Positions 2,232 through 57,083 of a stretch of 64,000 bases of DNA are shown here, piece after piece. Both the position numbers and the translations under genes were made by a program. This DNA comes from Mustelus asterias (Eukaryota). The notes below the pieces were generated by a model. The model did no database searches and had not been told where the DNA came from. It was given only the letters and a program-made list of their open reading frames with translations. Positions within the stretch are counted from its first letter, which is position 1. Every line of letters starts with the position of its first letter. Where the stretch lies: NCBI RefSeq assembly GCF_964213995.1, contig NC_135808.1, positions 7,316,001 through 7,380,000 on the forward strand. The letters run 5' to 3'.

Positions 2232-2265
2232 ATGTATCCAGTTATGGGTGTACTGCTAATTTCTG
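2232..2265 (+). CDS. Gene A exon 1: signal peptide (MYPVMGVLLIS, phase 1)
   Basis: ATG at 2232, hydrophobic codons, donor G|GTAAGT at 2266. Phase 1 joins the V exon in frame (...LLIS-A-VAVADVKVTQSP). An acceptor (ttcacAG, 2217-2218) lies just upstream, so a 5'UTR exon may exist. Confidence 0.75.
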
Positions 2266-3799
2266 GTAAGTCTTGAACTTAGTTGCATTTCTTGTTACAT
2301 TTGTTAATGGGAAGTGGGCTTCACCAAAAAGGCCAACATTTATTGCATACCAATTGTCCTTGAGACGTTGTTGGCGAACCGTTAAGTTGAACTGCTACAG
2401 TTCTTTGTAGTTTAGTAACACCCACTGTGTTGTTAGGAAGGTGTTCCAGGCTTTCAAAGCAGCACAATGGGTATATACGTCCAAGCCAGGGTGGGGATAT
2501 AAAGGTACTGGAATTACCAGGCGCCTGATGCCCTTTTCTTTTAAGGATGAATTAGCCAAGGGAAATGTGGGGGGTTACGGAGATGGGGCAGGAGGGAGGG
2601 CTAGGGTAAGATGCTCTGCAGGAGAGTCGGTGTAGACTCGATGGGCCGAATGGCCTCCTCTGCATTGTAGGGATTCTACGATTCTACGATAAGAGTAAGG
2701 GGAACATCATTTTCTCTCAGTGGGCCTCTAATCTGTGAAATTCTACCCTCCAGAGTATGTGTCATTGATTATGTTCTAGGCTCACGTTGACACATTGTTG
2801 ATCACTAAGTGAGTCAAGTGCTACGATGGACAGACAATAACGTGCTGTTCAGTCCACACTTAGATTAGCCATGATATTATTGAATGATGGAGAAGGTTCA
2901 AGAGACCGAGTGGCGTACTCCTGCTCACGATTCCTGTGTTCTTGTAGTATGATCAGTTCTGGAACACAATTCAACAGAACTGCGGTCTGAATGTGATCAG
3001 GTCCCACATCTTGTGCCATATTCAGGGCTTTCGGCAATTTCTTGTTATGTGAAGTGAATCGAGTAATTTGAAGCAAAATCTCCGATTTCGTGAACGTCAG
3101 GAACAAGCCGGGATGGATCATCCACTCTGAACAGCTCATTAAACTTTATTTATTTGTTAGTCACAAGTAAGGCTTACATTAACACTGCAATGAAGTTACT
3201 GTGAAATTCAGCTAGTCGCCACAGTCCGGCACCTGCTCAGGTCAATGCATCTAACCAGCACGCCTTTCAGACTATGGGATAAAACCGGAGTACACGGTGC
3301 AAACCCACGCAGACGCGGGGAGAATGTGCAGACTCCACACAGACAGTGACCCACGCCGGGAATCCAACCCGGGTCCCTAGCGCTGTGAAGCAGCAGTGCT
3401 AACCCTGTGCTACCGTGCCGCCTGATTAAAGATGGTTACAAATGCTTCCACCATTTCCTTTGTACTCACTCGCTCGCCGGATTCCCTGTTATTGAGGATG
3501 GGGGACGTTTAGAGAACCTCCTTCCCCTGTTAATTATTTAATCACTCACAGCCATTCACGAGTGGTTGGGGCAACTCTGCAGAGGTTGGATGTGATCCGT
3601 TAGTTTTGGATAGATCAGTATTCATAACATGCTGCTTCTATCGTTTAGCTTGCCTGTGTTGTTTCGACACCAGGTTGGCACCTGACATTTAGAGTTGTCT
3701 GGTGCTGTTCGTAACATGTTCACCACCACTTCTCATGAAATGAGTAGAGAAGTGCCGGGAGGTCTCTGCGAACAGGACTTTTAACATTGACCTGTAACA

Positions 3800-4018
3800 C
3801 AAATAAAAACAGAAAACTCTGGATAAACTGAGCAGGTCTGGTCGCATCTGTGGTTATGGACACATTAAGCGTTTCTAGTCCATTGTAGGGGGCGTCGTTG
3901 GACTCGCAACGATGCCTCCTGTTTCCCTCCCCGGAGATGCTGCCAGATCTGCCGAGTTTATTCAGCATTTGTGCTTTTATGTCAGATTTCCAGAAATCGC
4001 AGTATTGTACTTGTATTA
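3800..4018. mobile_element. Older copy of the hairpin family seen at 55843
   Basis: Degenerate arms (GGATAAACTGAGCAGGTCTGG / CCAGATCTGCCGAGTTTATTC) and the same 3' tail. Confidence 0.55.
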
Positions 4019-4352
4019 GCCTTTAACAGTCTCAGACTGGCTCAATGGGCATCAAGGAGATGACAACATCTAGAATGCGCATGCTCAGACGCGAACTTGG
4101 ATGTGATTTTGATCCCACGAAATTGCTCAGGGTTAAAGGCTGCAGAGGAATAATGAATTGTTCCCACCAAAATGGTTCATGATAGAAAATTCAATGGTCA
4201 TCTTCCTGCTGAAAGTCAAGGGATGTGAGTAAGGATTCTTTGTTTGATTTTGCCATTAGCCGCAGATGAATTATTGGCAAGGTGGCAGGACAGTAGTTTG
4301 AGGAGAGGAGTAGGTTTGTCTAACAAGTAAAACTGGAGTCTCTGCATTACAG

Positions 4353-4694
4353 CTGTTGCTGTTGCCGACGTCAAAGTAACTCAAAGCCCAGGTATTATCG
4401 ACGTAATAGAAGGAGGGCAATTTCAAATGTCCTGCACATTTACTGCGTCAAACGTGTCACCAGTCTTTGGATTCAGCTGGTACAAGCAAGCATCAGGTCA
4501 TGAAAAGAGTTGCGTTACGAACACATCTGAAGAATTTGTAGGCCGAGTTTTGAAGAAACACGGACAATTTTTAAACATCAGCCAAATTACAGTCATGGAG
4601 GCAAATCGGAATGATTCCGGGATATATTATTGTGAAGTGGATTCGCCGGAATTTGGCAAAGGAGCCGGAATGGGCACACAGGTAACTGTTAAAG
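4353..4694 (+). CDS. Gene A exon 2: single VJ-type Ig V domain, NKp30/NCR3-like
   Basis: Acceptor cattacAG 4351-4352, donor G|GTACGT 4695. Translation VTQSP..MSCTF..FSWYKQ..VTNTSEEFVGRV..DSGIYYC..GKGAGMGTQVTVK has B-strand Cys, C-strand Trp, DxGxYxC and a J-like GxGT in one exon. Confidence 0.93.
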
Positions 4695-4982
4695 GTACGT
4701 TCCTATGTGCTCCCATCCGCCTTTCTTTACATTTATTCTTTTCAATAACAGATAAAACTAATTATTCCTACAATATCCACTCTGTAATTCTGAGATAATA
4801 GTCATGAGGAATGTGTTCATTTTGAATACATGGAGATTAATGCTCATTTATCCAATTCCATATTAATTATTTGTTTGACTTGTACTCCATTAAAGCATAT
4901 ATTTCAAAGTTATTTCCACATTAACCTGGGGCATAGAGTTAAATGTGCAAATTGTATGTGAGAGTGTCTGATTTTTCTTTCT

Positions 4983-7434
4983 GTCATGGGGGACTTTAAC
5001 TTTCCAAATATTGATTGGAACCTTTGTAGGTCAAATAGTTTGGATGGGGCACTTTTTGTGCAGTGTGTGCAGGAGGGTTTCCTGACACAATATGTGGATA
5101 GTCCGACAAGGGGTGAGGCCACATTGGATTTGGTACTGGGAAATGAACCGGGCCAAGTGTTAGATTTGGTTGTGGGAGAGAACTTTGGAGATGGTGACCA
5201 CAATTCGGTGTCTTTTGTTATTGCAATGGAGAGGGATAGGGCCGGACGGCAGGGCAAGGCTTACAATTGGGGGAGAGGTAATTATGATGCGATTAGGCAA
5301 GAATTAGGGGGCATAAGATGGGAACAGAAACTGTCAGGGAAAGGCACTGATGAAAAGTGGAACTTTTTCAAGGAACAAATACTGGGTGTCCTTGATAGGT
5401 ATGTCCCTGTCAGGCAGGGAGGAAATGGCCGAGTGAGGGAACCGTGGTTCACAAAAGAGGTGGAATGTCTTGTGAAAAGGAAGAGGGAAGCTTATGTAGG
5501 GATGAGGAAACAAGGTTCAGATGGCTCGACTGAGGGTTACAAGTTAGCAAGGAACGAGCTGAAAAAGGGGCTGAGGAGAGCTAGGAGGGGACATGAGAAG
5601 TCCTTGGCGGGTCGGATCAAGGAAAACCCCAAGGCTTTTTACTCTTATGTGAGGAATAAAAGAATGACCAGGGTGAGGTTAGGGCCGGTCAAGGACAGTG
5701 GTGGGAACTTGTGTATGGAATCAGTAGAGATAGGCGAGGTGATGAATGAATACTTTTCTTCAGTGTTCACCAAGGAGAGGGGCCATGTTTTTCAGGAAGA
5801 GAAGGTGTTACAGGCTAATAGGCTGGAGGAAATAGATGTTCGGAGGGAGGATGTATTGGCAGTTTTGAATAAACTGAAGGTCGAAAAGTCCCCTGGGCCT
5901 GATGAAATGTATCCTAGGATTCTTTGGGAGGCGAGGGATGAGATTGCAGAGCCTTTGGCTTTGATCTTTGGGTCCTCGCTGTCCACGGGGATGGTGCCAG
6001 AGGACTGGAGAGTGGCAAATGTTGTTCCTCTGTTTAAGAAAGGGAATAGAAATGACCCTGGTAATTATAGACCGGTTAGTCTGACTTCGGTGGTTGGTAA
6101 ATTGATGGAAAAGGTCCTTAGGGATGGGATTTACGACCATTTAGAAAGATGCGGATTAATCCGGGATAGTCAGCACGGATTTGTGAAGGGCAAATCGTGC
6201 CTCACAAATTTGATAGAATTTTTTGAGGAGGTAACTAGGTGTGTTGATGAAGGTAGGGCGGTTGATGTCATATACATGGATTTTAGTAAGGCGTTTGATA
6301 AGGTCCCCCATGGTCGGCTTATGATGAAAGTAAGGAGGTGTGGGATAGAGGGAAAGTTGGCCGATTGGATAGGTAACTGGCTGTCTGATCGAAGACAGAG
6401 GGTGGTGGTGGATGGAAAATTTTCGGACTGGAGGCAGGTTGCTAGCGGAGTGCCGCAGGGATCGGTGCTTGGTCCTCTGCTCTTTGTGATTTTTATTAAT
6501 GACTTAGAGGAGGGGGCTGAAGGGTGGATCAGTAAATTTGCTGATGACACCAAGATTGGTGGAGTAGTGGATGAGGTGGAGGGGTGTTGTAGGCTGCAAA
6601 GAGACATAGATAGGATGCAAAGCTGGGCTGAAAAATGGCAAATGGAGTTTAACCCTGATAAATGTGAGGTGATTCATTTTGGTAGGACTAATTTAAATGT
6701 GGATTACAGGGTCAAAGGTAGGGTTCTGAAGACTGTGGAGGAACAGAGAGATCATGGGGTCCATATCCACAGATCTCTAAAGGTTGCCACTCAAGTGGAT
6801 AGAGCTGTGAAGAAGGCATATAGTGTGTTAGCTTTTATTAACAGGGGGTTGGAGTTTAAGAGCCGTGGGGTTATGCTGCAACTGTACAGGACCTTGGTGA
6901 GACCGCATTTGGAATATTGCGTGCAGTTCTGGTCACCTCACTATAAGAAGGATGTGGAAGCGCTGGAAAGAGTGCAGAGGAGATTTACCAGGATGCTGCC
7001 TGGTTTGGAGTGTCGGTCTTATGAGGAAAGGTTGAGGGAGCTGGGGCTGTTCTCTCTGGAGCGGAGGAGGCTGAGGGGAGACTTAATAGAGGTTTATAAA
7101 ATGATGAAGGGGATAGATCGAGTGAACGTTCAAAGACTATTTCCTCGGGTGGATGGAGCTATTACAAGGGGGCATAACTATAGGGTTCATGGTGGGAGAT
7201 ATAGGAAGGATATCAGAGGTAGGTTCTTCACGCAGAGAGTGGTTGGGGTGTGGAATGGACTGCCTGCAGTGATAGTGGAGTCAGACACTTTAGGAACATT
7301 TAAGCGGTTATTGGATAGGCACATGGAGCACACCAGGATGATAGGGAGTGGGATAGCTTGATCTTGGTTTCAGATGAAGGTCGGCACAACATCGTGGGCC
7401 GAAGGGCCTGTCCTGTGCTGTACTGTTCTATGTA
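4983..7434 (+). mobile_element. Young CR1-clade LINE (HER1-like), 5'-truncated, uninterrupted ORF2 (C-terminal APE endonuclease plus RT)
   Basis: 791-aa ORF 4986-7361 with GDFNFP, LDLVL, DH, YMDFSKAFD, GVPQGSVLGP and FADD motifs. CR1 3' hairpin (GGGCCGAAGGGCCT) and TTCTATG tail. Confidence 0.95.
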
Positions 7435-8911
7435 ATAATGCGTTTGGCGTGGGCAGAAGGGCGGGAACTGAAAGTCCGGTTTTTACCCTGAAATGGACTA
7501 AAGGCCAATACAGGGGCGGCCTCCTAGATTGAACATTGCGCCCATCTTCCTCCTACCCGCTCCCTCTCTGAAATCCACCCTCCCCCCCGCCCCCACCCCC
7601 CTACCGCACAGTGACCCCTGCCCCGAACACTACCAAACCCTTTTGAACCAAGACCCTGGAATTACTTTCTCCGAAGGCACTGGGGTTTGTGTGCGTATCT
7701 GCAGTCCAGGTAGCTGCGATTCACGCCTTCCTGGCTTTGTCGAGACTGATAGAGCTCAGGGCCAATGTAATTGGATGTATTGGGTACAATGATGAACGGG
7801 TGGCCCACTCAGCCCTGGGTAAAGAGCCCAGCAGTGCATTATGGCTGTTGGGATGGTCGGCGTGGAGCCAGTCGTCTTTCCATCCAGGTGGTGTGCGGGG
7901 TGGGAGCAACATGTCATCGCTTCTTCTACTATTCAAGCGAGTTGTTTCTTATCACTGAAATTGGATGACCAGACATTTTCGGCAACGGACCATTGGGAAG
8001 GTTGATGCCATCGTTTTCTCTCCCCGCCACAATCTCATCTTCATATCCACTGTCTCAATTGGGGGTAATTCTCTCAAACTGAGTCAGACATTTCCCAACT
8101 TGGGTGCCGTGTTGGACCTCATATTTGGTTTCTGACCATCCTTTCGTACCATCACGAAGATTGCACATATCTATCTGCCTTATATCCCACGCCCTAACTC
8201 TACCTTAGCCTCCGTGCTGCGGAAATCCTCGTCCATGCATCGTTACCTATAGATTTCGTTTCCTAACTTAACTTGCTCACAACCCCATTCACCATTCATT
8301 CCTATCCTTGCTAAATTTGATTGACGGCCCTTCATGAGCATTTTGAAATCTTCATTCCTGTATTCAAATTCCTCCATGGTTTACTGCCTCCCTATCGATG
8401 TTGACCATTGCGGCCCTGCAGCATCTGAGATAGAGCGCCATATTACCATAAGGTATAGGAGCAGAATTAGGCCATTCGACCCATCGAGTCTGCACCGCCA
8501 TTTGATCATGGCTGATAGGTTTCTGGACCCCATTCCCTAAGTCCATGAGATGAAGGTACAGAAAATGTGTAGAAATGTTAAAAAGACAAGTCTAAAGACA
8601 CGAGACGGTGGCACAGTGGTTAGCGCTGCTGCCTCACAGCGCCAGGGACCCGGGTTCGATTCCCAGCTTGGGTCATTGTCTGTGTGGAGTTTGCACATTC
8701 GGCCCGTGTCTGCACGGGTTTCCTCCGGGTGCTCCGGTTTCCAGCCATAGTCCTCCCTTGCAGGTTAGATGGATTGGCCACGGTAAATTTCCCTTTCGCG
8801 TCAGGGAGACTAGCTAGAGTAGATTTATGTGGAGAGGGCCTGTGTGGGATTATGGTCAGTGCAGACTCGCTGGGCCGAATGACCTCCTTCTCCAGGATTC
8901 TATGATTCTAG

Positions 8912-11770
8912 ATGGTTCCGCAGACCACACTGTTGAAGGGCAATGTGAGAAGGGCAATGAGATGGAAGCCTACACCACATGGACGAATGTTAATAATCTA
9001 CACTTTGATTGGGCAAAGCAAATCAGCTACAATACTGTGGCATATGAATTCCTGGAGTGTGTACGAGTTTTGTTGACCAGTATGTTCAACTAGGAAGCAC
9101 CAAGGAAACATGTCATCATAGATTTGTAATTATACAGTGACAATCGGTTAATTAATCATTTTCTTGTGAGTGGTCATTTAGCGAACAGTATCGGTACCAT
9201 GACAGAATTCTTCATTAAGGTGGAAAGATGTGCGAGTTAGGTTGATTGGCCAAGCTAAATTGACTCTCAGTTTCAGGGGGACTAGCAGGCTAAATGAGTG
9301 AAGCTGTGCAGATAGGGGCTATGTGCAATTGTGGCTGGTGCAAATTCGATGGGCCGAATGGCTTCCTTCTGCACTGTAGGGATTCTATGGTTTCTATCGT
9401 TCCTATGAGTTGGCTCGGTAGATTGTGGAACTTCATTAAAAGACATGATCGTGGCTAGGCAATGGCTAATACTTAAGGAAATAAGGTATGCATTGCAGCC
9501 GTTATATATCTCTTTCTGGTGCAAAAACAAAACAAGAAAAGTGGCCAAAATATGCCACTGCCAAGGATAATATTAGATCCAAACAGGAGTCCTATTACTT
9601 TGCTAGAAAAAGTAGCAAGCTGGAGGATTAGGAAAAATTCAATATTCCGCAAAGACGTCTAAGAGTTTGACTAAGGGGGAATGGAGTATGAAAGTAAACC
9701 TGCAGACAACATAAAAGTGGACACTCAAAGCTTCTGCAAGCATATAAAAAGAAAGAGAATAATGAAGACAAATGTAGGTCCCTTACAGTCAGAAAGAGTA
9801 GAACTTATAACAGAGAAGAAGGAAACAGTAGAGCAATCAAACAAGTACATTTTTCTTGTCTCCTTGGGGGAAGACACAAATAAACTTCCAGAAATGCTAA
9901 GGAATCTAGATTGTAGTGAGAAGGAAGACATTGAGGGAATTAGCAATACTAGAACATTTAGTGTCAGAGCAATTAATGGGAAGAAAACCAAAAAATCCCT
10001 AGGACCTGATAATCTACATGCTAGGGTAACAAAGGTGCTGGCTATGGGAATGATGCATGTGTTGGTTGTCATCACCAAAATTCTGCAGATTCTGGACAAT
10101 CCTGGCAGATTGAAGGGTCCCACATGTAACCTTGTTATTTACAAAATGAGCGAGGGAGAAAATACACAAGTTAGTTTCAGGTACGAAACTGGGAAGATGC
10201 TGGAGTCTATTATGAAGGACGCAATAACAGAACGGCTGGAGAATATAAAAGGGATTAGACAATGTCAATATTTTCCTCTGATGGAGAAATCCAGCACGAG
10301 GGGGCATGGCTTTAAATTGAGGGGGGGTAGTTATAGAACCGATGTCAGGGGTAGGTTCTTTACCCAGAGGGTGGTGAGGGATTGGAATGCCCTGCCAGCA
10401 TCAGTAGTAAATGCGCCTAGTTTGGGGGCGTTTAAGAGATCCGTAGATAGGTTCATGGACGAAAAGAAATTGGTTTAGGTTGGAGGGTCACAGTTTTTTT
10501 TTTTAACTGGTCGGTGCAACATCGTGGGCCGAAGGGCCTGTTCTGCGCTGTAATGTTCTATGTTCTATGTTCTATGTTCTATATGGATTTATGAAAAGGA
10601 AATTTCAGAAAGCTTCTGGTAAAGTCCCACAAAGGGGATTAGTGTACAAAATTGAAACATATGGGATTGGGGGAAACGGGATTGTTGAGAATTCGTTCGC
10701 AGAAAGGAAACAGAAAATAGGAATAAATGGGTCTTTTTCGATGTAGCGGGCAGTAACTAGTGAAGACTCACCGAGATCAATTCATAGGCCCTAACTATTC
10801 TCTAGGTACACCAATGATTTGGATGAAGGAACCAATGGTATGAATGCGGAAACTTAAAGTAATCTTTCCATAATTTGTTGATAAAGAGAGGTGTAGTGGG
10901 AAGTTGAGTAGTGACGAGGATGTTAGGAGGCTTAGTGGTAACTTAATCAAGTTGTGTGAATTGGAAAATACATGGCAAATGCAGTATTACGTGCGTAAAT
11001 ATGAAGTTGTTCACTTCGAAAGAAGAAACAGAATGGCAGAATATTATTCAAATGGTGACTGATTGGCAAACGTTGATGACAGAGACCTGGGCGACCTAGT
11101 TCACCACCCATTGAAAGCTAGCTTGCAGGTACAGCAACGGGTTATGAAGGCAAATGGCATGTTGGCCTTCATTGCAAAAGGTTTTGAGTACAGGAGCAAG
11201 GATGTCGTATTGCTGCTTTACAAGACCTCAATGAGTCCACACTTGCAGTATTGTGTGCAGTTTATGAGTACTTATTTAAGAAATGATACAATTGCCTTAG
11301 AGGGAGTGCAGTGAAAGGTCATCAGACTGATTCTTCAGATGACAGGATTGGCGCATGAGGAAAGATTTGGTCAATTGCGCCCGTATTCACTGAAATTGAA
11401 AAGAATGAGAGGGGCTCTCATTGAAATGTACAACATTTTGACAGGGCTGGACAGATTGGCTGCAGGTTTGATAATTCTTATGGCTGCAGGGATCTCAGTC
11501 TCAGGATTTGAGATAGGTCATTTAGGACTGAGGTGAATAGAAGTGTCTTCGCTCAGAGGGTGATGAACCTGTGGAGCTCTTTACAACAGAAGGTCAGTGG
11601 AGACCGAGAAACGTTAGAAAGGAAATAGATTTCAAGACTCTAAGGATGTCAGGGGTATGGGGAGAGCACTGGAGTAAGGCGTTGAGATAGAAAGTCAGCC
11701 ATTATCTTACTTCATAGCAGGGCAGGCTCACCGAACTGAATGGCCTACTCCTGGTCCTATTTTCTATGTT
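8912..11770 (+). mobile_element. Old CR1 LINE with nested partial SINE (about 9225-9400) and younger CR1 3' end (about 10269-10582)
   Basis: Degenerate CR1 ORF2 fragments (ORFs 9681, 11063, 11339) and a (TTCTATG)n tail of the inner insert. Confidence 0.8.
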
Positions 11771-12127
11771 TCCTGCATTGGCACGAATCAAAATGAGAGA
11801 AATGTTTTTTGTTAGCATTGTTCTTGTTCAGACTGGTCAAAGTTTATGTGAATTCCCTGTTCCATTTCAAACCGATTACGACAAATAGTACAACCTTGAC
11901 TTGGTGTTGAAACGCAAACATGCATGCACAGGTACCTCTTCATCCATAGTTATATCGGACAGTCATTGCATGTGCATGAATTTGTATTCTATATCACAGC
12001 TTCTTCGCCAAGGGGCATACTCAGTTATCCAAAGTTAATTGGATTCGGGCTAGCTTCGTGTTGGTACAACATTGTAGATCCTACATCTCACACACACTCA
12101 CAGGTAGATTTATTCATATAATCTTGG

Positions 12128-12533
12128 GCTTGTTAGGGTTGTTCTCCCTGGAAAGACGGAGGATGAGGGGAGACATAATAGAGGTGTATAAAATTATGAA
12201 AGGCATAGATAAGGTGAACGGTGGGAAGCTTTCCCCCAGGTCGGTGGTGACGTTCACGAGGGGTCATAGGTTCAAGGTGAAGGGGGGGAGGCTTAACACA
12301 GATATCAGAAGGACATATTTTACACAGAGGGTGGTGGGGGCCTGGAATGCGCTGCCAGGCATGGTGGTGGAGGCGGACACACTGGGAACGTTTAAGACTT
12401 ATCTAGACAGCCATATGAACGGAGTGGGAATGGAGGGATACAAAATAATGGTCTAGTTTGGACCAGGGAGCGGCACGGGCTTGGAGGGCCGAAGGGCCTG
12501 ATCCTGTGCTGTTTTGTTCTTTGTTCTTTGTTC
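12128..12533 (+). mobile_element. CR1 3' fragment
   Basis: LGLFSLERRRMRGD...FTQRVV and (TTCTTTG)n tail. Confidence 0.88.
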
Positions 12534-12884
12534 TTATATAACTCGGCAGAACGCAAAGGGGCACCTGATCTTTCTCTACACCCTAGCTATGACTGTAATA
12601 CTACATTCTGCACTCTCTCCTTTCCTTCTCCCCTATGCACCCTATGAACGTATGTTTTGTCCATAGCGTGCAAGAATCAACAGTTTTCACTGTGCCCCAA
12701 AACATGTGACAATGATAAATCAAATCAAATCAAACAAATACATTGTCATTGAAAAGGGAACTAAACAGTTAAAACATATGATTTACTTTTTAAAAACTGA
12801 CTTTACAGTGAGCCAAACATGTTGCTCAGTACATTGAAAAGCTAACTAGGATGTTATTGTTAGTAATCCTTTCATATTCCCCAG

Positions 12885-13013
12885 GTCAGGCCGAGAGCAA
12901 GGAAGAAGCTTCAAAGCAAAAGTTGATCGCTTTGTCTTCAGCGTTGGTGGTCACTACATTGGTGCTTCTCCTAATCGCCATCCTTATCTTCTTGAGCCGC
13001 AACAAGTGTCAAG
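12885..13013 (+). CDS. Gene A exon 3: stalk plus uncharged transmembrane helix
   Basis: Acceptor ttccccAG 12883-12884, donor G|GTAATT 13014, phase 1-1. GQAESKEEASKQK-LIALSSALVVTTLVLLLIAILIFL-SRNKCQ. Confidence 0.88.
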
Positions 13014-14816: not shown

Positions 14817-14848
14817 AGCGAACACCAAGAACTCGAAATAAAGCACAG
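14817..14848 (+). CDS. Gene A exon 4: short cytoplasmic exon (ERTPRTRNKAQ)
   Basis: Acceptor ttttgcAG, donor CAG|GTAAGA, 32 nt. Phase 1 to 0 exactly bridges the TM exon and the last exon. Confidence 0.75.
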
Positions 14849-17800: not shown

Positions 17801-17993
17801 CCTACAAGGCTTAAGTGGGCGAATGGGAATGGTTGGATGCCACTACAGAGAGTAGGCATGGACTCATAGAAATCATAGAAATCATAGAAACCCTATGGTT
17901 GGATGCCACTACAGAGAGTAGGCATGGACTCGATGGGCCTAATGGCTGTCTCCTTACGGTATTGACTCCGTAGTTCTATGATTATGCTTAAGA

Positions 17994-21200: not shown

Positions 21201-21304
21201 ATCTTCCTGCGGTTTTACATTAGGTCAGGAATGGCACTATTATGCTGAGCAACTGCAGCGTTAACATCTCCGTTTCTTTCTTTTTAAATTTTGTTTCATT
21301 TGAG

Positions 21305-21553
21305 GGAGACACGTCAAACAATGTTGTTTATGCTGACCTGCGCATCGCCAAACCCAAAACACAGAGACCGGGGAACCGCACGAACAATCATGTCGCGGGA
21401 TCCCCGCCTCACCGAGGCGAAGACAATGTTGTGTACGCGGCAGTGGGGCCAGGTCTTGATAAAAAGAACAAGAATCGGGCGCCAGTGAGATCTCGAAACC
21501 AGATGGAAGAACCGGTAGTGTACGGAATGGTTCGGCCTCCAGTAGGCCAATGA
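21305..21553 (+). CDS. Gene A exon 5: cytoplasmic tail with three ITIMs (VVYADL, VVYAAV, VVYGMV)
   Basis: Long polypyrimidine tract then tttgAG (21303-21304), phase 0, stop TGA 21551-21553. Three V-x-Y-x-x-L/V motifs with Tyr codons at 21329, 21434 and 21521. Confidence 0.85.
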   Translation, partial: GDTSNNVVYADLRIAKPKTQRPGNRTNNHVAGSPPHRGEDNVVYAAVGPGLDKKNKNRAPVRSRNQMEEPVVYGMVRPPVGQ

Positions 21554-39439: not shown

Positions 39440-39526
39440 CTACTGCATGTTCCTCCTTGGCAGCGCTGGGCGGTTTTTCATTGCTTTGGCTTCATTACCG
39501 TGACAGTGAAGGTAACTATCATCCTG
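39440..39526 (-). CDS. Gene B terminal exon ((Q)DDSYLHCHGNEAKAMKNRPALPRRNMQ*)
   Basis: Pyrimidine tract then NAGNAG acceptor (aaAG/CAG), phase 0, TAG at 39440-39442. AT-rich downstream region with AATAAA on the minus strand at 39172-39177. Confidence 0.55.
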   Translation of the reverse strand, partial: QDDSYLHCHGNEAKAMKNRPALPRRNMQ

Positions 39527-41426: not shown

Positions 41427-41479
41427 CTGATGTTGGACGTGATCTCGCACTTCCCGCACTTTCTTTCTCTGAGGTACTT
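41427..41479 (-). CDS. Gene B candidate exon 6b (EVPQRKKVREVRDHVQHQ)
   Basis: gaaacAG ... CAG|GTAAAT, 53 nt, phase 1 to 0, open. Confidence 0.5.
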
Positions 41480-44986: not shown

Positions 44987-47900
44987 GATTCAACGGCATC
45001 CTGGCTGATCCGCTGTAGTGGCCAACCACAGTGTTCAAATTTTTTTGAGTTGATCAGAAACTCGTTCGGTTAATTTCAACATCAAACACAAAGTCAGAAT
45101 GTATCTATATCATCAAAAGCAACCTATTTATATCAGTATACAGAGGAACCAATTCATAAAGTGAGCATGTGGTTATAGAAAATACACTGGTCAAACGCTT
45201 GGATTGCTGTTTGTACAACGAGGCTCCGAAGGGATGAACCCTTTTCATTCTACGAAACAGCCGGGCCTCTACCACCTCGCCCACCACGGAATCCGCGTGG
45301 GCGAGGGCCCGACAACTGAAATGTCCGTCTCGCCCGAGCGAGGCCGTAAAATCCCTCCCGGACCGATCGATTATCAACACAAAACGACCATAAACAGACG
45401 GAAAGAAATAACGCGCTTAAAATGCGCTCAATCCAGAGAACACCAGCCGGTTTGTCACTTCAGTCGATTTTTCTCAAAACAAGTTTAATCGCTGCTCTTT
45501 GCGGTAGGTTTACAATTCCACGGAATGAAATGCACTTTAGTTCAGTAAAAAATTGATGCATCGTTCATTCTGGTTCCATTTACCTGAACTACCAAAACTT
45601 CTTGTCATGAGTTAGTGGCGAACATGAAGCAATAATTAGAAAGGGCTGGAGGCTCATTATGCGACCTTGTGCCTCAGCAGATCAGATGGGTGCATCAGCT
45701 GCACATTTGTGGAGTGTGGGAGGAAACCGGAGCACCCGGAGTAAGCACACGCAGTCAAAGGCAGAATGAGCAAACTCCACACAGGCAGTCACCCAAGTCC
45801 AGACTGGTAAGCACTGCTGTCTCACAGCGCCACGGACCCGGCTTCGATTCCAGCCTTAGGTTACCGTCTGTGTGGAATTTGTACGTTCTCCCCGTGTCTT
45901 CGTGGGTTTCCTCTGAATCTGCCGGTTTCCTCCAGTCTAAAGATGCGCTGGTTAGGTGGTTTGTCCATGCTAAATTGCCCCTTAGTGTCCAAAGATGTGT
46001 ATGTTAGGTAGATTAACCATGGTAAGTGTGTGGGATTACGAGGATTCGTAGGGGTGGGGCGAGCTGGGTAAAATGCTCTTTCGGAGAATCCTGTGGAGAC
46101 ACGTTGGGCCACATGACCTCGTTCTGCACTGTCGGGATTATATGGTTCTCGCGATTCTACGGCTCGGCCGAGGAAAAGCCATTGAAGAACTCTTGCTGAA
46201 CACATCACACAAAATGCTAATTAAAATTATAAAATTAAGGGAAATCATCTCTTGCCTCTGATACGGGAAGGAGAACCGTTTGAAAGAATAACTGACGATG
46301 TGGATATTCTGGCAGCGAATAAATGTGAACGGCAAGATCTGTTGCTCACGCCTGTGCAAAGAAGCGGAAAGGATGTGACCAAGTTATTGTGACCGATACG
46401 GGAATATCCTCACCGGGAAGTAATGTAGTCTGAAACAGGTCGATGCTTTATTTGTACAAGCGGGGTCACATACTGTCGTTGGCTGTAATCACATCCGAGA
46501 AGTTTAGAAAGGAAGAGAATAAGCAGAAATTGTTAAAAATAGAAGCACAAGGGAACGGATTATAGCAACAGAAAGGAAAATAGCTGGCCGGCAATGGCTT
46601 ATTCGGGAGTACAAAAGCTGTAAAGAGTGATCGTGCCTAGAGGAAGAATGGATGGTTAACCCTTTCGAGCAAACAAAGGCAGCAAAATAGTTCTGCATGA
46701 ATTCGTTTTCTTAAGTACGGGAAGAGTAAAAAAGATCTGAAGATTTTTTTGAAATGTGATCCTACAGTACATATTGGAGTTTGTACTTGTTTTGGGAAGA
46801 CTAACAGACGGACAGATGTTCTTCTTATTGAGTGTACTTTACGCGTATTGTTATATTTAAACCTACATCTGTTCACTGTCGTTTTGTGTTGTAGTGATTT
46901 ACAGAAATGGAATGGCTTAACCCTTTGCAGCCTCAGTTGTTGCCACTAAAGCTGAAATTGACCGAAAAAGTTTCTAGTCAATTCAGCAAATTCTGAATAC
47001 TGGGGCTGGCCACTACAGTGGCACATATGGTTCAGCCAGCAGATCAGCCAGATCACATTGAATGATGGAAGAGGCTCGAGGAGTCAAATGGTCTACTCCT
47101 GCTCACATTTATCATGTTCTTATGCTCTTATTTAAACTATGCTGATATTGCTTCACATACCGCAGGAGTGCATGGCAATAAAAGTTGACCAGACCATGAG
47201 AAGGAATTCCTACTTCAAAATGGTTGAGAGAAAATAAGGCTTGAAGTCTTGAATTTGTTAAATAGATAGCGACGTTATGAGAGCGTAGATGTTGTTGCGA
47301 AAACTGGTGTTTCTGCGTTTTCATTTAAGAGTATTTCTCTAAAGAAAAAAAGACTTAAGGAAGCTTTGTGCTTTCATTAAAAAGTATTTGCTTGTATCCG
47401 TTTTGTGATAAAGGCTTGCCGTATAACTACCGTGAATGTAACTTACACTTCACCACTTCACCACCTTCTGCCTGTACAAGGCGAGAACAGTTTGTCTTAA
47501 CAGCGCCTCTGAAACTGATATTGAGCGTCATGGCTCCAGCTTGTCACCACAATGTTGAGGAAATGTGTAAGTGAGCATGAATGGAAATTACATTTCAAAA
47601 CGTATTTTATTCTGATGTTAAATATAAGGGTTATGTTAAGCAAAACTTTCCAAATTTCAATTCTGATTCCTTTACACGTCATGAAAAGAAATCTCAGAAT
47701 CACCCTGAGCTCACTCAGTGACTGCTATGTTGAAATAAAGCAACTTTTGCTGAATCATCTCACTGCTGAAAGGCCACCTCTTCTAAGTTTCAAAATTTAG
47801 TTGTCATGTGATCAAATTCCAATCTGTTTATTTCCCAATAGAAAGGAATAAATATTCCTTGCTGCTCTGAACAAGGACAAATCCTTATTTTGCTCACTAA

Positions 47901-48024
47901 TGACAATCGGTGGATCAATATAGGTTGATCTATTTCAGGCACAATGATGCATGATAAACCTTTATTTGCGTACTCTGTCTATCTTTGTGCGTTCAAACCC
48001 AGTGGTTTGTTTGAGTTGAAGCAG

Positions 48025-48295
48025 CATACGCATAGACACACACAAACGCACACAACACACATGTACTCACACACGCAAACACATACGCACACACACTCAC
48101 AAAAACAGAAACACATATACACACCCACACACAAACAGAAACACACACAACACACACAGACACATACACAAACATACAGATATAAACACACTCACGTACA
48201 CATACACGCATTCACACACTAACACACACTCACATTTGCTTACATGCATACACACATTCACACACACATACATACATGCACATACATCCACACAG
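48025..48295 (+). repeat. Degenerate (CA)n microsatellite
   Basis: Direct reading of the sequence. Confidence 0.95.
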
Positions 48296-48365
48296 CCTGC
48301 AGATTTTTTATATTAATACAAGCAACTGACAACATCTTGATCAAATAAAGATGGTGATCACTTAC

Positions 48366-48400
48366 CTGGTTCTTTTGCGCAATCAAAAGAAGAACATTCT
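48366..48400 (-). CDS. Gene B exon 5: 35-nt cytoplasmic exon (ECSSFDCAKEP)
   Basis: ttttgttctgcAG ... CAG|GTAAGT, phase 2 to 1. Confidence 0.7.
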
Positions 48401-48513: not shown

Positions 48514-48532
48514 CTGACAAGTAAAGCGTAAG
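48514..48532 (-). CDS. Gene B exon 4: 19-nt cytoplasmic micro-exon (AYALLVR)
   Basis: tttttacAG ... AG|GTAAGA, phase 1 to 2, continues in frame into the next exon. Confidence 0.7.
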
Positions 48533-51645: not shown

Positions 51646-51780
51646 CTTTGTTTCGTCGAGCCAGAACTATTATCACCATTAGCAGTACCAGGATAATAAG
51701 CAAGGTGACCCCCCCTGCCACTGCGATCCACATCCAGTCAAACAGAAAGTTGTTTACAGGGAGTGATTTGTCGCAAACAT
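51646..51780 (-). CDS. Gene B exon 3: Cys-containing stalk plus uncharged TM
   Basis: Acceptor tttctacAG, donor G|GTATTT, phase 1-1. HVCDKSLPVNNFLFDW-MWIAVAGGVTLLIILVLLMVIIVLA-RRNK. Confidence 0.88.
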
Positions 51781-52100: not shown

Positions 52101-52427
52101 GCTGTACGGTCACCGAGGTTCCGTTGCCTGATTGCTTCGGTTTCCCCAAAATTTCAATCTCACAGTAATATATCCCGGACTCGCATTCTGTCATATTCTT
52201 AATACGGATGGATGCATCCTTCCTCGAATTGAAAGCATGCTGGTCCGCTTTAACAATTCTGTTCTTGTACCTCGGAGAGTCAAAATCTATGGGGTTGTCA
52301 TCCCTCCTCCAGCTGTAGGTTCCCAGCCCTTGTAACTGAAAACTGCAATTCAAAATCACGCTTTCACCTTGGAATATATGAACTGAACCGGGTCTTTGCA
52401 CTACGGGAGAAGTGGCGGCCTCCGTAC
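52101..52427 (-). CDS. Gene B exon 2: single VJ-type Ig V domain, NKp30/NCR3-like
   Basis: Acceptor cactAG, donor C|GTAAGG, phase 1-1. VVQRP..GESVILNCSF..GTYSWRRD..DASIRI..ESGIYYCEIEILGKPKQSGNGTSVTVQ, resembling the NKp30 YxCxVEVLG....GNGT G-strand. Confidence 0.93.
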
Positions 52428-54379
52428 CTAGTGATTTACAAAGAAAGACAAAGATTAATTAGCCATTGCAAAGGCAAAAAATGGTGTATCGCGCATGTTG
52501 AACCAATACCATTTTGTTTAGTTGTGGCACCTTCGCCTGTGACACAAATAATTGCAAGTTGTAGGCGCATATTATTCTAAGAAAATATTGATGCAGTAAA
52601 TAAGGGAATGTTTTTCCCCACAAAGTGCAGTAGAGAAAATTTGATGCTCAATAGAAAAAACAAAAAAACTCTTGTGAACTATTGATCTCGTCCTAATTGA
52701 AGAATCTCGGTGTGAACAAAGCATTTGGCGCGTTGGCCTATGGAGCAACAAAGATTATGGTTCAGTCGGCATTCATTGGCCATGAAGCTCCTTTCCACCA
52801 ATAGCCCAAAAGACGTGCTGGTTAGGTGCATTGGCCGTGCTAAATTCTTTCTCAGTATACCCGAACGGGCCCTGGGGTGTGGCGACTAGGTGAATTCATT
52901 GCAGTATTAATGTAAGCCTACTTGTGACACTAGTAAATAAACTAATAAATAAACTTTAAAACTTCAAGACCTTTGGGAAGTCTTGAGTTGAAAATCATGC
53001 AACCTCAGATTGCCCTCTGCATTAGTTCAACAGTATGTTATCATTAGTTTCGAAATAAATTATTATATGTATGATTAAAAAATACGAGAGAGGAAGTATT
53101 GGAAAAGGAAAGAGGGAATGACAGGTATAAATAGAAAATAATGAAGAGAAAATCAAAAACATCATTTTAATTTTATATTGTTGAATTGATATTACAAAAT
53201 AATAAATCAATTCAATACATTTATCCTTAGATAATTATATACGAATATCTGATTTCAGAAACAGGATATTATGATAAAAGATGTTTCGTTAATATATAGA
53301 GCCAGAATATAATTCGAAATGGGCGACATGGTGACACAGTCGTTAGCACTGCTGCCTCACAGCACCAGGGACCCAGGCTTGATTCCCGGCTTGGGTCACT
53401 GTTTGTGTGACGTTTGCACATACTCCCCGTGTCTGTGTGGGTTTCCTCCGGGTGGTCTGGTTTCCTCCCACAGTCCAAAGATGTGCGGGGTAGGTGGATT
53501 GACCATACTAAATTGGCCCTTAGTGTCAGGGGGACTGGCTAGGGTAAATGCATTGGGTTATGGGGATAGGGCCTGCGTGGGATTGTGGTCGCTGCAGACT
53601 CGATAGGCCGAATGGCTTCCTTCTGCACTGTAGGATTATATGATTCTATGCTGGCATTTGCTATTAATACCTTGCGTTAATGGAACAATAAACTAGAACA
53701 CTCACAGAAGAGGCCATTCGGCCCATCGAGTCGGCACCGCCGCATGAAAGGCCCGGACCTGTCCAACTAACCCCACTTGACAACACTTGGCCCATAGTCT
53801 TGAATGTTAACAGAATCATAGAATACTACAGTGCACAACAAATCATTGAAAACTGTCCACATCATAAACATAAATTCAGGGAAACGAAACATTTGCCCAA
53901 ATATATTCAGAGATCTGGCCGATCACAGTTGCCCAGTTCCTGTGTCAAGCAACCATGAAGAAATGGATCAATGCAGGAACACATATTTCTTTGTGAACCT
54001 GTTTGAATTGCTGCTCACATATTGAAGTGAGGCCCTTGTTTCTCCTGTAAACATAAACTGGATTTTTCATTGAAGATTGAATGCTTTTTTATATATGTGC
54101 TGAGTTGGGCTTCTATCAAGGATTCCTTTTCCATACCATGTCCATAAATAACTGAATTGAACTTACTTTCTAGATTTAAATATTACAATCTAGGGCGTTA
54201 ACCCTATTGGGTGTCATGCCTTTGCTTAAAAGCTGCTCTCCTCAAAGGAAAAGAACAGCTATCTATAAATATATCGGATGTGGCATATAAAAATACGATC
54301 ATTCCAATGTATTCACACAGAAGAAAGCTCCATGTTTAGTTTTCGTGTTAATTCACTGGATTATTTTTAATCAGCATCG

Positions 54380-55015
54380 TGGGGATTACCATTAACCAGA
54401 AACTGATCTGGACTAGCGACATAAATACTGTAGCTACAAGAGCAGGTCAAAGGCTAGGAACCCTGGGGCGATTAACTCACCTCCTGACTGCCCAAAACCT
54501 GTACGCCATCCACAAGACACAAGACAGGGATGTGATGGCATGCTCTCTACTTGCCTAAATGACTGTAGGTCCAACAGCGCTCAAGATGCTTGACACCATC
54601 CAAGACAAAGCAAACTGCTTGACTGCTATACATTTCACAAGCATTCGATTCTGCCACCACAAACGAACAGTGGCAGCTTGTGTACCATCTGCAAGTTGCA
54701 CTGCCGGAACTCGTCAGTGTTCCTTCGGCAGCAGGTTCCAAACCCCCGACCACTACCATCTAGAAGGACACGGACAGTAGATACATAGCAACACCATCAA
54801 CTGCCAATCATCACCCTGACTTGCCAATATATCGCCGTTCCTTCACTGTCGCTGAGTCAAAATCCTGGAACTCTCTCCCTAACAACATTATAGGTCTGCC
54901 TACAGCACATGGATTGCAGCGGTTCAAGAACACAGCTCACCGCTACCTGGCAAGGGCAACTAGTGACGGGCAATATATGTTGGCCTAGCCAGCGGCGCTC
55001 ACATCCTGTAAAGTA
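54380..55015 (+). mobile_element. L2/CR1-group LINE 3' fragment (related pieces about 38800-39150 +, 2920-3140 - and 3440-3740 -)
   Basis: Shared sequence (GCTACAAGAGCAGGTCA.., ATATCGCCGTTCCTTCACTGTCGCTG, GGTTCAAGAA..CAGCTCA). The tail is shared with the second SINE family. Confidence 0.55.
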
Positions 55016-55842
55016 ATCCTTAAAAGAAATGACTGCATGCTTGGACTGAGATGAAACTTACCGATTTTTCGGCTGCATGTAGCAATAATAAAGAAATATG
55101 ATGAACATTATTTAGACAATTAACAAGAAACGCTCATTTCTCTCTGATCCCTACCCGAAATTTGTGACAATACGATTTCTGACTTGACAGAAGGTATTCT
55201 TCCACGATAAGCAACAAAGTATTATAGTTACTATTCTAAACTGTACACTTGGTTGCATGTTTGTTTTCTGGCAAAACAATTCTATCAACGCATTGGCTGA
55301 TTTTGAAAAGAAGAAATAATATGAATTACATCACATGTTCTTCCCAATAATTCCGGGAGAATTGGAGCCCAAAGTTGATTTGAGCTGTTAACATCTGACG
55401 TTAGACATAACTCGATAATATCGCTGGCAATGCTTTGCAAATCCTTATTTAAAAGTATCTTGATATTAAACACAAACGTTAGAGCAAATGATTATTAGAA
55501 AGGGTAATTCTGTAACTTCTGATTAATTGTATCATTTGCAGCAATTATTTGTGTAAAGTATCTGTCAACTTGGTTGCACTGCAGGAAGCAAAACCAAACA
55601 TTCTAGATTGGCGATTTGAAAACCATAGCTTGCCTGGTGAGATTGTATCAGGGGAATTGCAGGTGCCATTGTTTGCAACAGCATCTCCAGTCATTAGAAG
55701 AGGTACAGAGTTGCACGGTTAAACCCTGAATGAACTTTGAGGAACTATCGACAATTGGGATTTCTTTGACAAGAATATCTAAAAGAGCATATGGTCCAAT
55801 GATCTAAAATTATAATGGGTTGCGCAAACTGGAGTCAGTCTG

Positions 55843-56022
55843 TAACCAAAGGAGAAAATGCTGGAAAATCTCAGCAGGTCTGGCAGCAAGGAGAAAAAAG
55901 AATTGACATTTCGAGTCCAGGTGACCCTTTGTCAAAGCTGATGTTGCCAGACCTGCTGAGATTTTCCAGCACTTTCTCTTTTGGTTTCAGATTCCAGCAC
56001 CCGCAATAATTTGTTTTTATTT
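55843..56022. mobile_element. Short hairpin (inverted-repeat) insertion, probably a second Penelope-like family
   Basis: 16-bp TSD AACTGGAGTCAGTCTG (55827-55842, 56023-56038). Arms TGCTGGAAAATCTCAGCAGGTCTGGCA / TGCCAGACCTGCTGAGATTTTCCAGCA. Confidence 0.75.
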
Positions 56023-57022
56023 AACTGGAGTCAGTCTGCATATCGGTTACAAGATTTTAGGATTTTCACAAATTACAAACAGCACAAAAAATCGGAAATG
56101 CTGTAGGAATTTATTCCCTATACGTCTCAAGAAGGTGGAACATTTTACTGGCAATTGGAGTGGAAGGAATAAACGTGTTAGGTGTGAGAATCAACAGTTA
56201 GGATTGAGTAATTTCAGAAACGCACCGAGGGACTATTCGTGGGCTAAATGATTCGGCAGTTACTAAGTTGGATGCATTCTTTGATTTGCAGAGACCACAG
56301 AGTCGCTAAAAAAAAACTCACTAACAATTGTGTGTTATTAGTCCCAGGTTGGTAACTGAGCAAAACATTTCTTTAGATAACAGACATCGAAAATAAAACA
56401 GAGAAATGTAAGCACGTGGTTTAATAATTTGCTGCAAAAATCATTCCAAATATATGAATATAGATATACAACGTGAGCGGGTGAAAAATATAAAAATATA
56501 ATCTCTACAGTGCAAAAAGAGGCCATTCAGCCCATCGAGTCTGCACCGACCACAATCCCACCCATATCCTATTCCCATAGCCCCACATATTTACTCTGCT
56601 AATCGTCTGACACGAGGGTCAATTTAGCATTGCCAATCAACCTAAGCTGCACATCTTTGGAGTGTGGGAGGAAACCGGAGCACCCGGAGGAAACCCAAGC
56701 GGACACGGGGGGAATGTGCAAACTCCACACAGACAGTGACCCAAGGCCAGAATTGAACCCAGGTCCATGACGCTGTGAGGCAGCACTGCTAAGCACTGTG
56801 CCGCAGTGCTAAGCACTGTGCCACCGTGCTGCCCCTCAATAGATTTTTAATTCCAGATATTTTTATTGAATTCAAATTCCACCACCTGCCGTGGCGGGAT
56901 TCGAACCCGGGTACCCAGAACATTAGCTGAGTGTCTGGATTAATAGTCTCGCGATAAAAAAATATCGCCTCCCATGGTTTTCTTGCAATATTCAAACAAT
57001 CAGAGCGCGACTATTCACTTAC

Positions 57023-57083
57023 CCGTTAGACAACTCGAAATCAGGAGAAATAGAGAGGTCGTTGCCCACCGTTCTGTCGCCAT
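57023..57083 (-). CDS. Gene B exon 1: signal peptide (MATERWATTSLFLLISSCLT, phase 1)
   Basis: ATG in good context (gcaATGG), hydrophobic core, donor G|GTAAGT. Joins the V exon in frame (CLT-G-TEAATSPVVQ). Confidence 0.8.

What the first reader, a model, noticed from the sequence alone, without database searches (positions are those of the whole stretch)
2232..57083. Convergent pair of germline-joined VJ (NKp30-like) receptors with contrasting tails: candidate inhibitory/co-stimulatory pair in a cartilaginous fish
Seen: two tail-to-tail genes, each leader / one V exon containing its own J-like G-strand (GxGT) / TM / split tail. Established: mammalian NKp30 is a VJ-type single-domain receptor that activates through a TM arginine pairing with CD3zeta/FcRgamma, and unrearranged VJ-type genes are studied as relatives of antigen-receptor V domains. 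Seen: neither gene has a charged TM core residue; A has three ITIMs, B has a CD28-like stalk and a Tyr/Pro tail. Inference: an adaptor-independent inhibitory plus co-signalling pair, possibly binding B7-family ligands such as B7-H6 or B7-H7. The two V domains are quite divergent, so this is not a recent duplication.
Basis: partly seen in the sequence, partly recalled or inferred. Interest (0 to 1): 0.85.

Follow-up and report, generated by a model that had tools for sequence, protein, structure and literature searches.

The report
Two neighbouring shark NKp30-family receptor genes
Two real, already annotated shark genes for single-domain immune receptors of the NKp30 (NCR3) family lie tail to tail here, one with inhibitory tail motifs and one with a highly conserved tail of unknown role; they belong to a published gene family and nothing shows that they work as a pair.

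Summary
Gene A (+, 2232-21553, 5 coding exons, 261 aa) and gene B (-, 57083-39440, 7 coding exons, 238 aa) each have a leader, one V exon with its own GxGT strand, a TM exon and a split tail. All 10 introns are GT-AG. Their products are 100% identical to Mustelus asterias RefSeq proteins XP_078075389.1 and XP_078075384.1, both named "uncharacterized".

Both belong to the shark NCR3 (NKp30) family reported for nurse shark in 2021.
- **Gene B:** it has orthologues in 13 shark species, including a deposited nurse shark NCR3 (QTT61900.1, 67% identical). Human NKp30 is its best solved-structure match by sequence and by predicted fold.
- **Gene A:** it sits in a faster-evolving clade and carries three canonical ITIMs. 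Its named relatives are NCR3 or NCR3-like.

Neither gene has the NKp30 TM arginine. Gene B lacks ITIM, ITSM, ITAM, YxxM and YxN motifs and the CD28-family loop motifs, so "co-stimulatory, CD28-like" is unsupported. Its TM and juxtamembrane segment (RNKAYALLVREC) are the most conserved parts of the protein.

The two V domains are 25% identical and lie in separate old clades, so they are neighbours in a cluster, not a ligand-sharing pair. No RNA reads could be laid. Verdict: new members of a known kind, of modest interest.

The parts
2232..2265 (+). Gene A exon 1: ATG and leader (MYPVMGVLLIS + 1 nt), donor GTAAGT
4353..4694 (+). Gene A V exon (phase 1-1), VJ-type, G strand FGKGAGMGTQVTV
12885..13013 (+). 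Gene A stalk/TM exon (LIALSSALVVTTLVLLLIAILIFL, no charged residue, no stalk Cys)
14817..14848 (+). Gene A 32-nt micro-exon (ERTPRTRNKAQ)
   Evidence: matches DRTPxxxxEEQ in homologues
21305..21553 (+). Gene A last coding exon with three ITIMs (VVYADL 21323-21340, VVYAAV 21428-21445, VVYGMV 21515-21532), stop 21551-21553
57023..57083 (-). Gene B exon 1: ATG (57083) and leader MATERWATTSLFLLISSCLT + 1 nt
52101..52427 (-). Gene B V exon (phase 1-1), NKp30-like, ...YYCEIEILGKPKQSGNGTSVTVQ
51646..51780 (-). Gene B stalk (HVCDK, conserved Cys) and TM exon (WIAVAGGVTLLIILVLLMVIIVLA), RRNK; read-through of its donor would end the protein at RRNKGI
48514..48532 (-). Gene B 19-nt micro-exon (AYALLV + 2 nt)
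   Evidence: (1 match, 0 expected)
48366..48400 (-). Gene B 35-nt tail exon ((R)ECSSFDCAKEP)
41427..41479 (-). Gene B 53-nt tail exon (EVPQRKKVREVRDHVQHQ)
39440..39526 (-). Gene B last coding exon (QDDSYLHCHGNEAKAMKNRPALPRRNMQ, stop 39442-39440); NAGNAG acceptor

Best explanation
These are two adjacent but functionally independent members of the shark NCR3 (NKp30-like) multigene family, in the genome of Mustelus asterias or an identical sequence.

Gene A (LOC144497825) encodes a monomer-type, single-VJ-domain receptor. Its tail carries three ITIMs, spaced 35 and 29 residues apart. Inferred mechanism: ligand binding leads to phosphorylation of the ITIM tyrosines by Src-family kinases, SHP-1/SHP-2-type phosphatases are recruited, and the cell is inhibited.

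Gene B (LOC144497820) is the starry smooth-hound orthologue of a slowly evolving NCR3 lineage found in 13 shark species; no copy number was counted. It has an NKp30-like V domain and a conserved membrane-proximal Cys, so it is probably a disulfide-linked dimer. It has no TM arginine and no canonical tyrosine signalling motif. Its conserved TM (AVAGGV) and invariant juxtamembrane segment (RNKAYALLVREC) suggest that it works through a conserved partner or through YxxL-based sorting. They do not suggest CD3zeta/FcRgamma pairing or CD28-type signalling.

Shown here: gene structures, identity to RefSeq models, family placement and motif content. Inferred: all signalling steps, dimerisation, ligands and expression.
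For: - **Gene models.** Exon-by-exon 100% matches to P0177 and P0159. 10/10 GT-AG introns and lengths summing to whole codons.
- **B is NKp30-like.** Human NKp30 is the best single-domain solved match by sequence (E 1e-8; profile E 1.8e-9). It fills ranks 1-4 of the fold search (TM 0.79-0.81, model pLDDT 93.7).
- **B orthologues.** 9 of 29 significant hits have 65-100% identity in the V exon. Their 90% clusters add more species and nurse shark NCR3 QTT61900.1, which is 67% identical over 176 aa.
- **B conservation in 10 full-length models.** Juxtamembrane 89% mean identity with 15/22 columns invariant; TM 77% with 15/26; V 72%.
- **A family placement.** 9 of 15 significant hits are 52-100% identical. 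The tail exon is 60% identical to P0011 over 84 aa. Of 30 hits to the A V exon whose names I looked up, 17 are NCR3 or NCR3-like, 10 uncharacterized, 3 carry other names and none is Ig or TCR. The A-clade profile scores human NKp30 at 47 bits, the best receptor that is not an antigen receptor.
- **A ITIMs.** The first is present in 7 of 8 and the second in 8 of 8 aligned models, two of which are isoforms of one Carcharodon gene.
- **Tree.** A clade 99/94, B clade 100/98, B sister to the TM-Arg shark NCR3-like genes at 85/89.
Against: - No run holding the stretch is on record as RNA; two small runs of unknown kind hold 0.40 of its words.
- The predicted fold of the A V domain is nearest antibody, VHH, VNAR and TCR V domains. 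NKp30 is not among the listed (top-50-ranked) matches.
- The tree has no V domain from outside the NCR3 family, so it cannot test family membership. The branching among the major clades and mammalian NCR3 is unresolved.
- RefSeq models are predictions; I could not see what supports them.
- MHC linkage was not tested.
- The 2021 nurse shark paper was not readable, so I cannot say which published subtype B matches, or whether an A-type gene is described there.
Confidence: 0.8

Rival explanations
1. One reading: A and B form a functional inhibitory/co-stimulatory pair, with B a CD28-like co-signalling receptor, both binding B7-family ligands.
For: The genes are convergent neighbours with 3' coding ends about 18 kb apart. 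B has a conserved stalk Cys, as the CD28 family does, and two PxxP stretches in its tail. NKp30 is known to bind B7-H6 (PDB titles).
Against: The V domains are 25% identical and lie in different old clades, unlike paired receptors. B lacks the CD28-family loop motifs quoted in PMC11599192. It lacks YxxM and YxN (read). No CD28, CTLA-4 or PD-1 chain is among the best 60 sequence or listed (top-50-ranked) fold matches. Of the six full-length models, the C-terminal PxxP is kept in 4 and the first PxxP in 3.
Confidence: 0.08
2. Gene A is not an NCR3-family gene. It belongs to another non-rearranging VJ lineage closer to antigen-receptor V domains (for example SIRP-, NITR- or UrIg-like) and is merely embedded in the cluster.
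For: The best solved matches by sequence and fold are antibody, VHH, VNAR and TCR V domains. It is only 34% identical to the nurse shark NCR3 QTT61904. The model has the extra strands of a full V domain.
Against: Of 30 named database relatives, 17 are NCR3 or NCR3-like from chimaera to guinea pig and none is Ig or TCR. NKp30 scores 47 bits with the clade profile, level with single-domain VNAR at 49 bits. It has one V domain and no C domain, so it has neither SIRP nor UrIg architecture.
Confidence: 0.1
3. One or both genes are unexpressed relics whose RefSeq models are homology artefacts.
For: No RNA evidence was obtained here. Gene A has an 8.2-kb intron holding a LINE.
Against: Both reading frames are intact through 5 and 7 exons with consensus splice sites. 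The 19-nt and 32-nt micro-exons encode peptides conserved across species (AYALLV invariant in 10 models; RT..Q in 8 of 8). A nurse shark cDNA-derived orthologue of B exists in GenBank.
Confidence: 0.04

Closest known systems
Nurse shark NCR3 family genes (Kinlein et al., Immunogenetics 2021; accessions MT914154-914161 as listed in PMC12227049; proteins QTT61900.1 and QTT61904.1 seen here)
   Same: Non-rearranging single VJ-domain receptors in sharks. B is 67% identical to QTT61900.1 over leader, V, stalk and TM, and that protein sits in the 90% cluster of the whale shark B orthologue.
   Different: QTT61900.1 ends at RRNKGT (175 aa), so it lacks the long conserved tail in the RefSeq models. 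A is only 34% identical to QTT61904.1. I could not read the paper, so its abstract content (eight divergent subtypes, MHC linkage, thymic expression of one subtype) is recalled, not seen.
Mammalian NKp30 (NCR3)
   Same: A single VJ-type Ig domain encoded by one exon, plus a stalk, a TM and a short alternatively spliced tail. It is the best solved match of B by sequence and fold. The G-strand region is closely similar (alignment).
   Different: NKp30 signals through a TM arginine that pairs with TCR-zeta/FcRgamma (PMC5371597, passage in section 4). Neither A nor B has a charged TM residue. A has three ITIMs; B has a 68-aa tail without known motifs and a stalk Cys.
ITIM-bearing inhibitory IgSF receptors (SIRPalpha, KIR-L, LILRB, PZR/MPZL1; Xenopus XMIV, recalled)
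   Same: A has tandem (V/I)xYxx(L/V) motifs, at a spacing I recall to be typical of receptors that recruit SHP-1/2. SIRPalpha V domains are the second-best solved group for B.
   Different: SIRPalpha has two further C1 domains. MPZL1 V domains lack a J-like strand, and no MPZ chain is among the best 60 matches. The NCBI name 'myelin protein zero-like protein 1' given to three B orthologues is not supported by B's motif content, since B has no ITIM.
CD28/CTLA-4 family
   Same: A single V domain, a GxG in the G strand, and a membrane-proximal Cys in B.
   Different: B has no PPP or E-I-P loop motif and no YxNx or YxxM tail motif (motifs as quoted from PMC11599192; MYPPPY is recalled). The family is not among the best solved matches. 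That paper's shark sequences are in supplements I could not open.

Membership tests
NKp30 / NCR3 (vertebrate family, by sequence) | One non-rearranging VJ-type Ig domain encoded by a single exon with its own GxGT G strand | tested here: met
   A 4353-4694 and B 52427-52101, both phase 1-1, V-set 51.2 and 43.8 bits.
NKp30 / NCR3 (vertebrate family, by sequence) | Nearest characterised relative is NKp30 | tested here: met
   B: NKp30 is the top single-domain match by sequence and takes ranks 1-4 by fold. A: 17 of 30 named relatives are NCR3 or NCR3-like and none is Ig or TCR, and NKp30 scores 47 bits with the clade profile. However, A's nearest folds are antibody V domains, so A is met by sequence only.
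NKp30 as an activating receptor | Arginine in the TM segment pairing with CD3zeta/FcRgamma (PMC5371597) | tested here: not met
   The TM of A (LIALSSALVVTTLVLLLIAILIFL) and of B (WIAVAGGVTLLIILVLLMVIIVLA) have no charged residue. A shark relative, P0118, does have it (IMLRIFLGL).
NKp30 / NCR3 | Linkage to the MHC; binding to B7-H6 | not tested
Scan notes gave no MHC gene near the window. Binding is not testable with these tools.
Shark NCR3 family of Kinlein et al. 2021 | Orthology to a deposited nurse shark NCR3 sequence | tested here: met
   B: 67% identity to QTT61900.1, which clusters at 90% with the whale shark B orthologue. A: inconclusive, since only QTT61904.1 was available and it is 34% identical.
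ITIM-type inhibitory receptors | (S/I/V/L)xYxx(I/V/L) in the cytoplasmic tail, conserved in relatives | tested here: met
   A: VVYADL, VVYAAV, VVYGMV. In 8 aligned models, two of them isoforms of one Carcharodon gene, motif 1 is present in 7, motif 2 in 8, and motif 3 is canonical in 2 plus one variant. B: none. Phosphatase binding is not testable here.
CD28/CTLA-4 family | CDR3-region motif (PPP, E-I-P or YxCx6PPP, as quoted in PMC11599192; MYPPPY is recalled) and a YxxM or YxNx tail motif | tested here: not met
   The B loop reads YYCEIEILGKPKQSGNGT. The tail tyrosines sit in AYALL and SYLHC. Motifs are as quoted in PMC11599192. No family member is among the best solved matches.
CD28/CTLA-4 family | Membrane-proximal Cys for a disulfide-linked dimer | tested here: met
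   B has H-x-C-D-K, invariant in all 8 aligned orthologues. Dimerisation itself was not tested.
SIRP family | N-terminal V domain followed by two C1-set domains | tested here: not met
   Each gene goes from its V exon directly to the TM exon, and the RefSeq products have one Ig domain.

The most novel reading that the evidence does not exclude
The B lineage may be a distinct, ancient NCR3 receptor type whose signalling module is undescribed. That module would be a glycine-rich conserved TM plus the invariant juxtamembrane RNKAYALLVREC, followed by YLHCH and a basic PxxPxR end. Alternative use of the TM-exon donor would switch between this long tail and an almost tail-less form. The tail-less form ends RRNKGI in this window and RRNKGT in the nurse shark cDNA protein. 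This would echo the tail isoforms of human NKp30. If so, the deposited nurse shark sequence shows only the short form, and the conserved long tail would be a new handle on how the oldest NKp30-type receptors signal without a TM arginine.
Probability: 0.25. Interest if true: 0.55.

Novelty: new member of a known kind. Interest (0 to 1): 0.3.

Why it matters
NKp30 is said to be the one NK receptor traceable across jawed vertebrates, and its VJ domain bears on the origin of antigen receptors (abstract recalled; passages of PMC12227049 and PMC10751288).

This window adds two clean gene models to that family in another shark. It also shows that one lineage (B) is far more constrained in its TM and juxtamembrane parts than in its ligand-binding domain. 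That is a concrete lead for biochemical work. It does not reveal a new kind of receptor or a new pairing principle.

Tried and rejected
- **Short search with the B V exon.** The search for homologous proteins with the B V exon alone found nothing; its length window excluded full-length kin.
- **Tails by eye.** Scanning open frames did not locate the B tail. The exons came from the RefSeq protein.
- **Names given by NCBI.** MPZL1, pIgR-like, IGSF11-like and turtle-homologue names of relatives were considered and rejected as automatic labels. The proteins have VJ domains, and B has no ITIM.
- **Tail domains.** Pfam and NCBIfam found no domain in either tail.
- **Internal duplication of the A tail.** The only support is three 19-nt copies at 74% identity. 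I treat this as weak.
- **Literature.** Kinlein 2021, Flajnik 2012 and Ohta & Flajnik 2015 are not held. Reviews gave only citations. A search for the B juxtamembrane motif in papers found 0, and this covers only the held library.
- **MHC linkage.** Scan notes gave nothing near the window.
- **Supplements.** I did not ask for any. The shark CD28-family sequences of PMC11599192 are in supplements and could refine the CD28 test.

Full report
**Observation.**
The window holds exactly two V-type Ig exons, at 4353-4694 (+) and 52427-52101 (-). Both pass Pfam V-set. The G strands read GMGT and GNGT.

**Gene models.**
I first built gene A from splice sites and from the tails of homologues. The last exon is 60% identical over 84 aa to P0011. 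A pattern derived from homologues picked out a 32-nt micro-exon at 14817-14848.

A profile search then returned two proteins 100% identical to the V exons:
- P0177, XP_078075389.1, "uncharacterized protein LOC144497825 [Mustelus asterias]", 261 aa.
- P0159, XP_078075384.1, LOC144497820, 238 aa.

Both are recorded on a 140,552,254-base record. tblastn placed every exon of both proteins in the window at 100% over the exon-encoded residues. The one missing piece of B, six residues, is a 19-nt micro-exon at 48532-48514. It is the only match of its pattern, with none expected by chance. All 10 introns are GT-AG, and the exon lengths sum to 786 and 717 nt.

**What they are.**
The B V exon finds human NKp30 as its best single-domain solved relative (E 1e-8; with the orthologue profile E 1.8e-9). 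Its AlphaFold model (pLDDT 93.7) has four NKp30 chains as its top four Foldseek matches (TM 0.79-0.81), followed by SIRPalpha.

The A V exon behaves differently. Antibody, VHH and VNAR domains lead both by sequence and by fold (model pLDDT 90.9). NKp30 scores 47 bits with the A-clade profile, level with a single-domain VNAR at 49 bits.

In the exhaustive representative search with the A V exon, 233 proteins reached E 0.001 and 150 were listed. I looked up names for 30 of the 150. Twenty were chosen mostly for likeness to A or B. Ten were chosen as further single-domain hits, without regard to likeness to A or B. Seventeen are named NCR3 or NCR3-like, from elephant shark, rays, reedfish, newt, turtles, marsupials and guinea pig. 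Ten are "uncharacterized", three carry other automatic names, and none is an Ig or TCR chain. I therefore file both genes in the NCR3 family, B firmly and A by sequence only.

**Two lineages.**
A and B are 25% identical. I built a maximum-likelihood tree of 36 V domains. Two of the 38 chosen rows were dropped, and no V domain from outside the NCR3 family was included.
- B falls in a clade of 9 shark rows (100/98) with short branches.
- That clade is sister, at 85/89, to the shark NCR3-like genes P0118 and P0113. P0118 has an NKp30-type TM arginine and a stalk Cys.
- A falls in a separate clade of 9 rows (99/94) with long branches (its own is 0.49). That clade sits next to another shark and ray clade at 86/82; P0119, one of its three members, has ITIM-like tail motifs (IYAKL, VVYSA, IVYATV).
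- The order of the major clades and of mammalian NCR3 is unresolved.

Identity to relatives in other species is 50-55% in the V domain for A (7 models) against 65-79% for B (10 models).

**Gene A.**
The tail has VVYADL, VVYAAV and VVYGMV, with tyrosines at residues 188, 223 and 252. In 8 aligned models, two of them isoforms of one Carcharodon gene, the first motif is present in 7 and the second in 8. The third is canonical in 2, variant in 1, and lost to earlier ends in the rest. There is no charged TM residue and no stalk Cys. The likely mechanism is ITIM phosphorylation and SHP-1/2 recruitment, inferred from what is established for other ITIM receptors. A newt NCR3-like protein also ends in ITIM-like motifs (P0123), so inhibitory NCR3 relatives are not new in kind.

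**Gene B.**
Orthologues come from 13 species:
- Mustelus asterias, Scyliorhinus torazame, S. canicula and Carcharodon carcharias
- Cetorhinus maximus, Rhincodon typus and Ginglymostoma cirratum
- Chiloscyllium punctatum, C. plagiosum and Hemiscyllium ocellatum
- Heterodontus francisci, Heptranchias perlo and Pristiophorus japonicus

They include both Galeomorphii and Squalomorphii. No ray or chimaera orthologue appeared, but the search is word-limited.

The nurse shark member is QTT61900.1, deposited as NCR3. It is 67% identical to B and ends at RRNKGT. In the window, reading through the TM-exon donor gives RRNKGI and then a stop. This hints at a conserved short-tail isoform beside the long one. 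RefSeq also lists products of different length for the B orthologue in four species: 200 and 234 aa in Rhincodon; 213 and 234 in C. punctatum; 235, 239 and 240 in S. torazame; 234 and 246 in Heterodontus. I aligned only the 200-aa form, which diverges in the tail.

Across 10 full-length models, conservation by region is as follows:

| Region | Mean identity | Invariant columns |
|---|---|---|
| Juxtamembrane segment | 89% | 15 of 22 |
| TM | 77% | 15 of 26 |
| V domain | 72% | not given here |
| Stalk | 48% | not given here |

In the stalk, the H-x-C-D-K motif is invariant. The tail has no ITIM, ITSM, ITAM, YxxM or YxN. Its tyrosines sit in AYALL (invariant) and SYLHC. A C-terminal PxxP followed by basic residues is kept in 4 of 6 full-length models.

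I infer three things about B:
- It is a disulfide-linked dimer.
- It depends on a conserved membrane or juxtamembrane partner, or on YxxL-based sorting.
- It does not signal like NKp30 through a TM arginine (PMC5371597), nor like CD28.

**The pair claim.**
The two genes converge, with about 18 kb between their stop codons. Nothing else links them. Scan notes, which are unchecked, describe NKp30-like genes for more than 130 kb on both sides and again 13 Mb away. In Chiloscyllium punctatum the B orthologue and the P0113-type gene lie two locus tags apart on one scaffold. This fits the tree and suggests that, if B has a counterpart, it is that lineage and not A.

**Novelty.**
The family, its divergence into subtypes and its presence in sharks are published. 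Kinlein et al. 2021 is cited in PMC10450919 and PMC12272517 (reference lists seen), and the accession series is given in PMC12227049 (passage seen). The paper itself is not held, so its content is recalled from the abstract. Both genes are annotated in RefSeq. What may be new is the strong constraint on the B TM and juxtamembrane segment and the long tail that is missing from the deposited nurse shark protein. A search of the held papers for that motif found none.

**Limits.**
No reads were laid, and I left that place out of all later queries.
- No run holding the B stretch is on record as RNA. Two small runs of the genome's own study hold 0.40 of its words, which may or may not be transcripts.
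- Supplements were not opened. Those of PMC11599192 hold the shark CD28-family sequences.

Noticed in passing
window 4986-7361 (+) and 60560-61669 (-): A stop-free 791-aa LINE reverse-transcriptase ORF (RVT_1, E 9e-33) sits in intron 2 of gene A. A second copy covers its last 292 residues at 96% identity on the other strand, which suggests a recently active LINE family.
   Followed up: partly
window 51646-51638 (-): If the donor after the gene B TM exon is not used, the frame stops after two codons (RRNKGI). The deposited nurse shark orthologue QTT61900.1 ends the same way (RRNKGT). This may be a conserved short-tail isoform.
   Followed up: partly
window 39521-39530 (-): The acceptor of gene B's last exon is a tandem AAAG-CAG (NAGNAG) site. 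It could add or drop one Gln. S. torazame models of 239 and 240 aa exist.
   Followed up: no
window, many places, e.g. 1446-1913, 37245-37547, 37883-38233, 45669-46007, 53319-53606, 56599-56796: There are many copies, on both strands, of one SINE-like repeat whose translation reads ...STVVSTAASQLQGPGFDSRLGSLSVWSLH...
   Followed up: no
window 47944-48222: A long imperfect CA/TG-rich low-complexity tract lies in gene B's intron between 48366 and 41479.
   Followed up: no
P0118/P0183 (Heterodontus francisci) and P0113 (Chiloscyllium punctatum): The sister lineage of gene B shares B's WRR and RIVK V-domain features. P0118 also has a stalk Cys and an NKp30-type TM arginine (IMLRIFLGL). In C. punctatum the P0113 gene lies two locus tags from the B orthologue on one scaffold. 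It is a more plausible activating counterpart of B than gene A is.
   Followed up: partly
window 21314-21524 (+): The three ITIM codon blocks of gene A are 19-nt direct repeats at 74% identity, spaced 105 and 87 nt apart. This is weak support for the scan note that the tail grew by internal duplication.
   Followed up: partly
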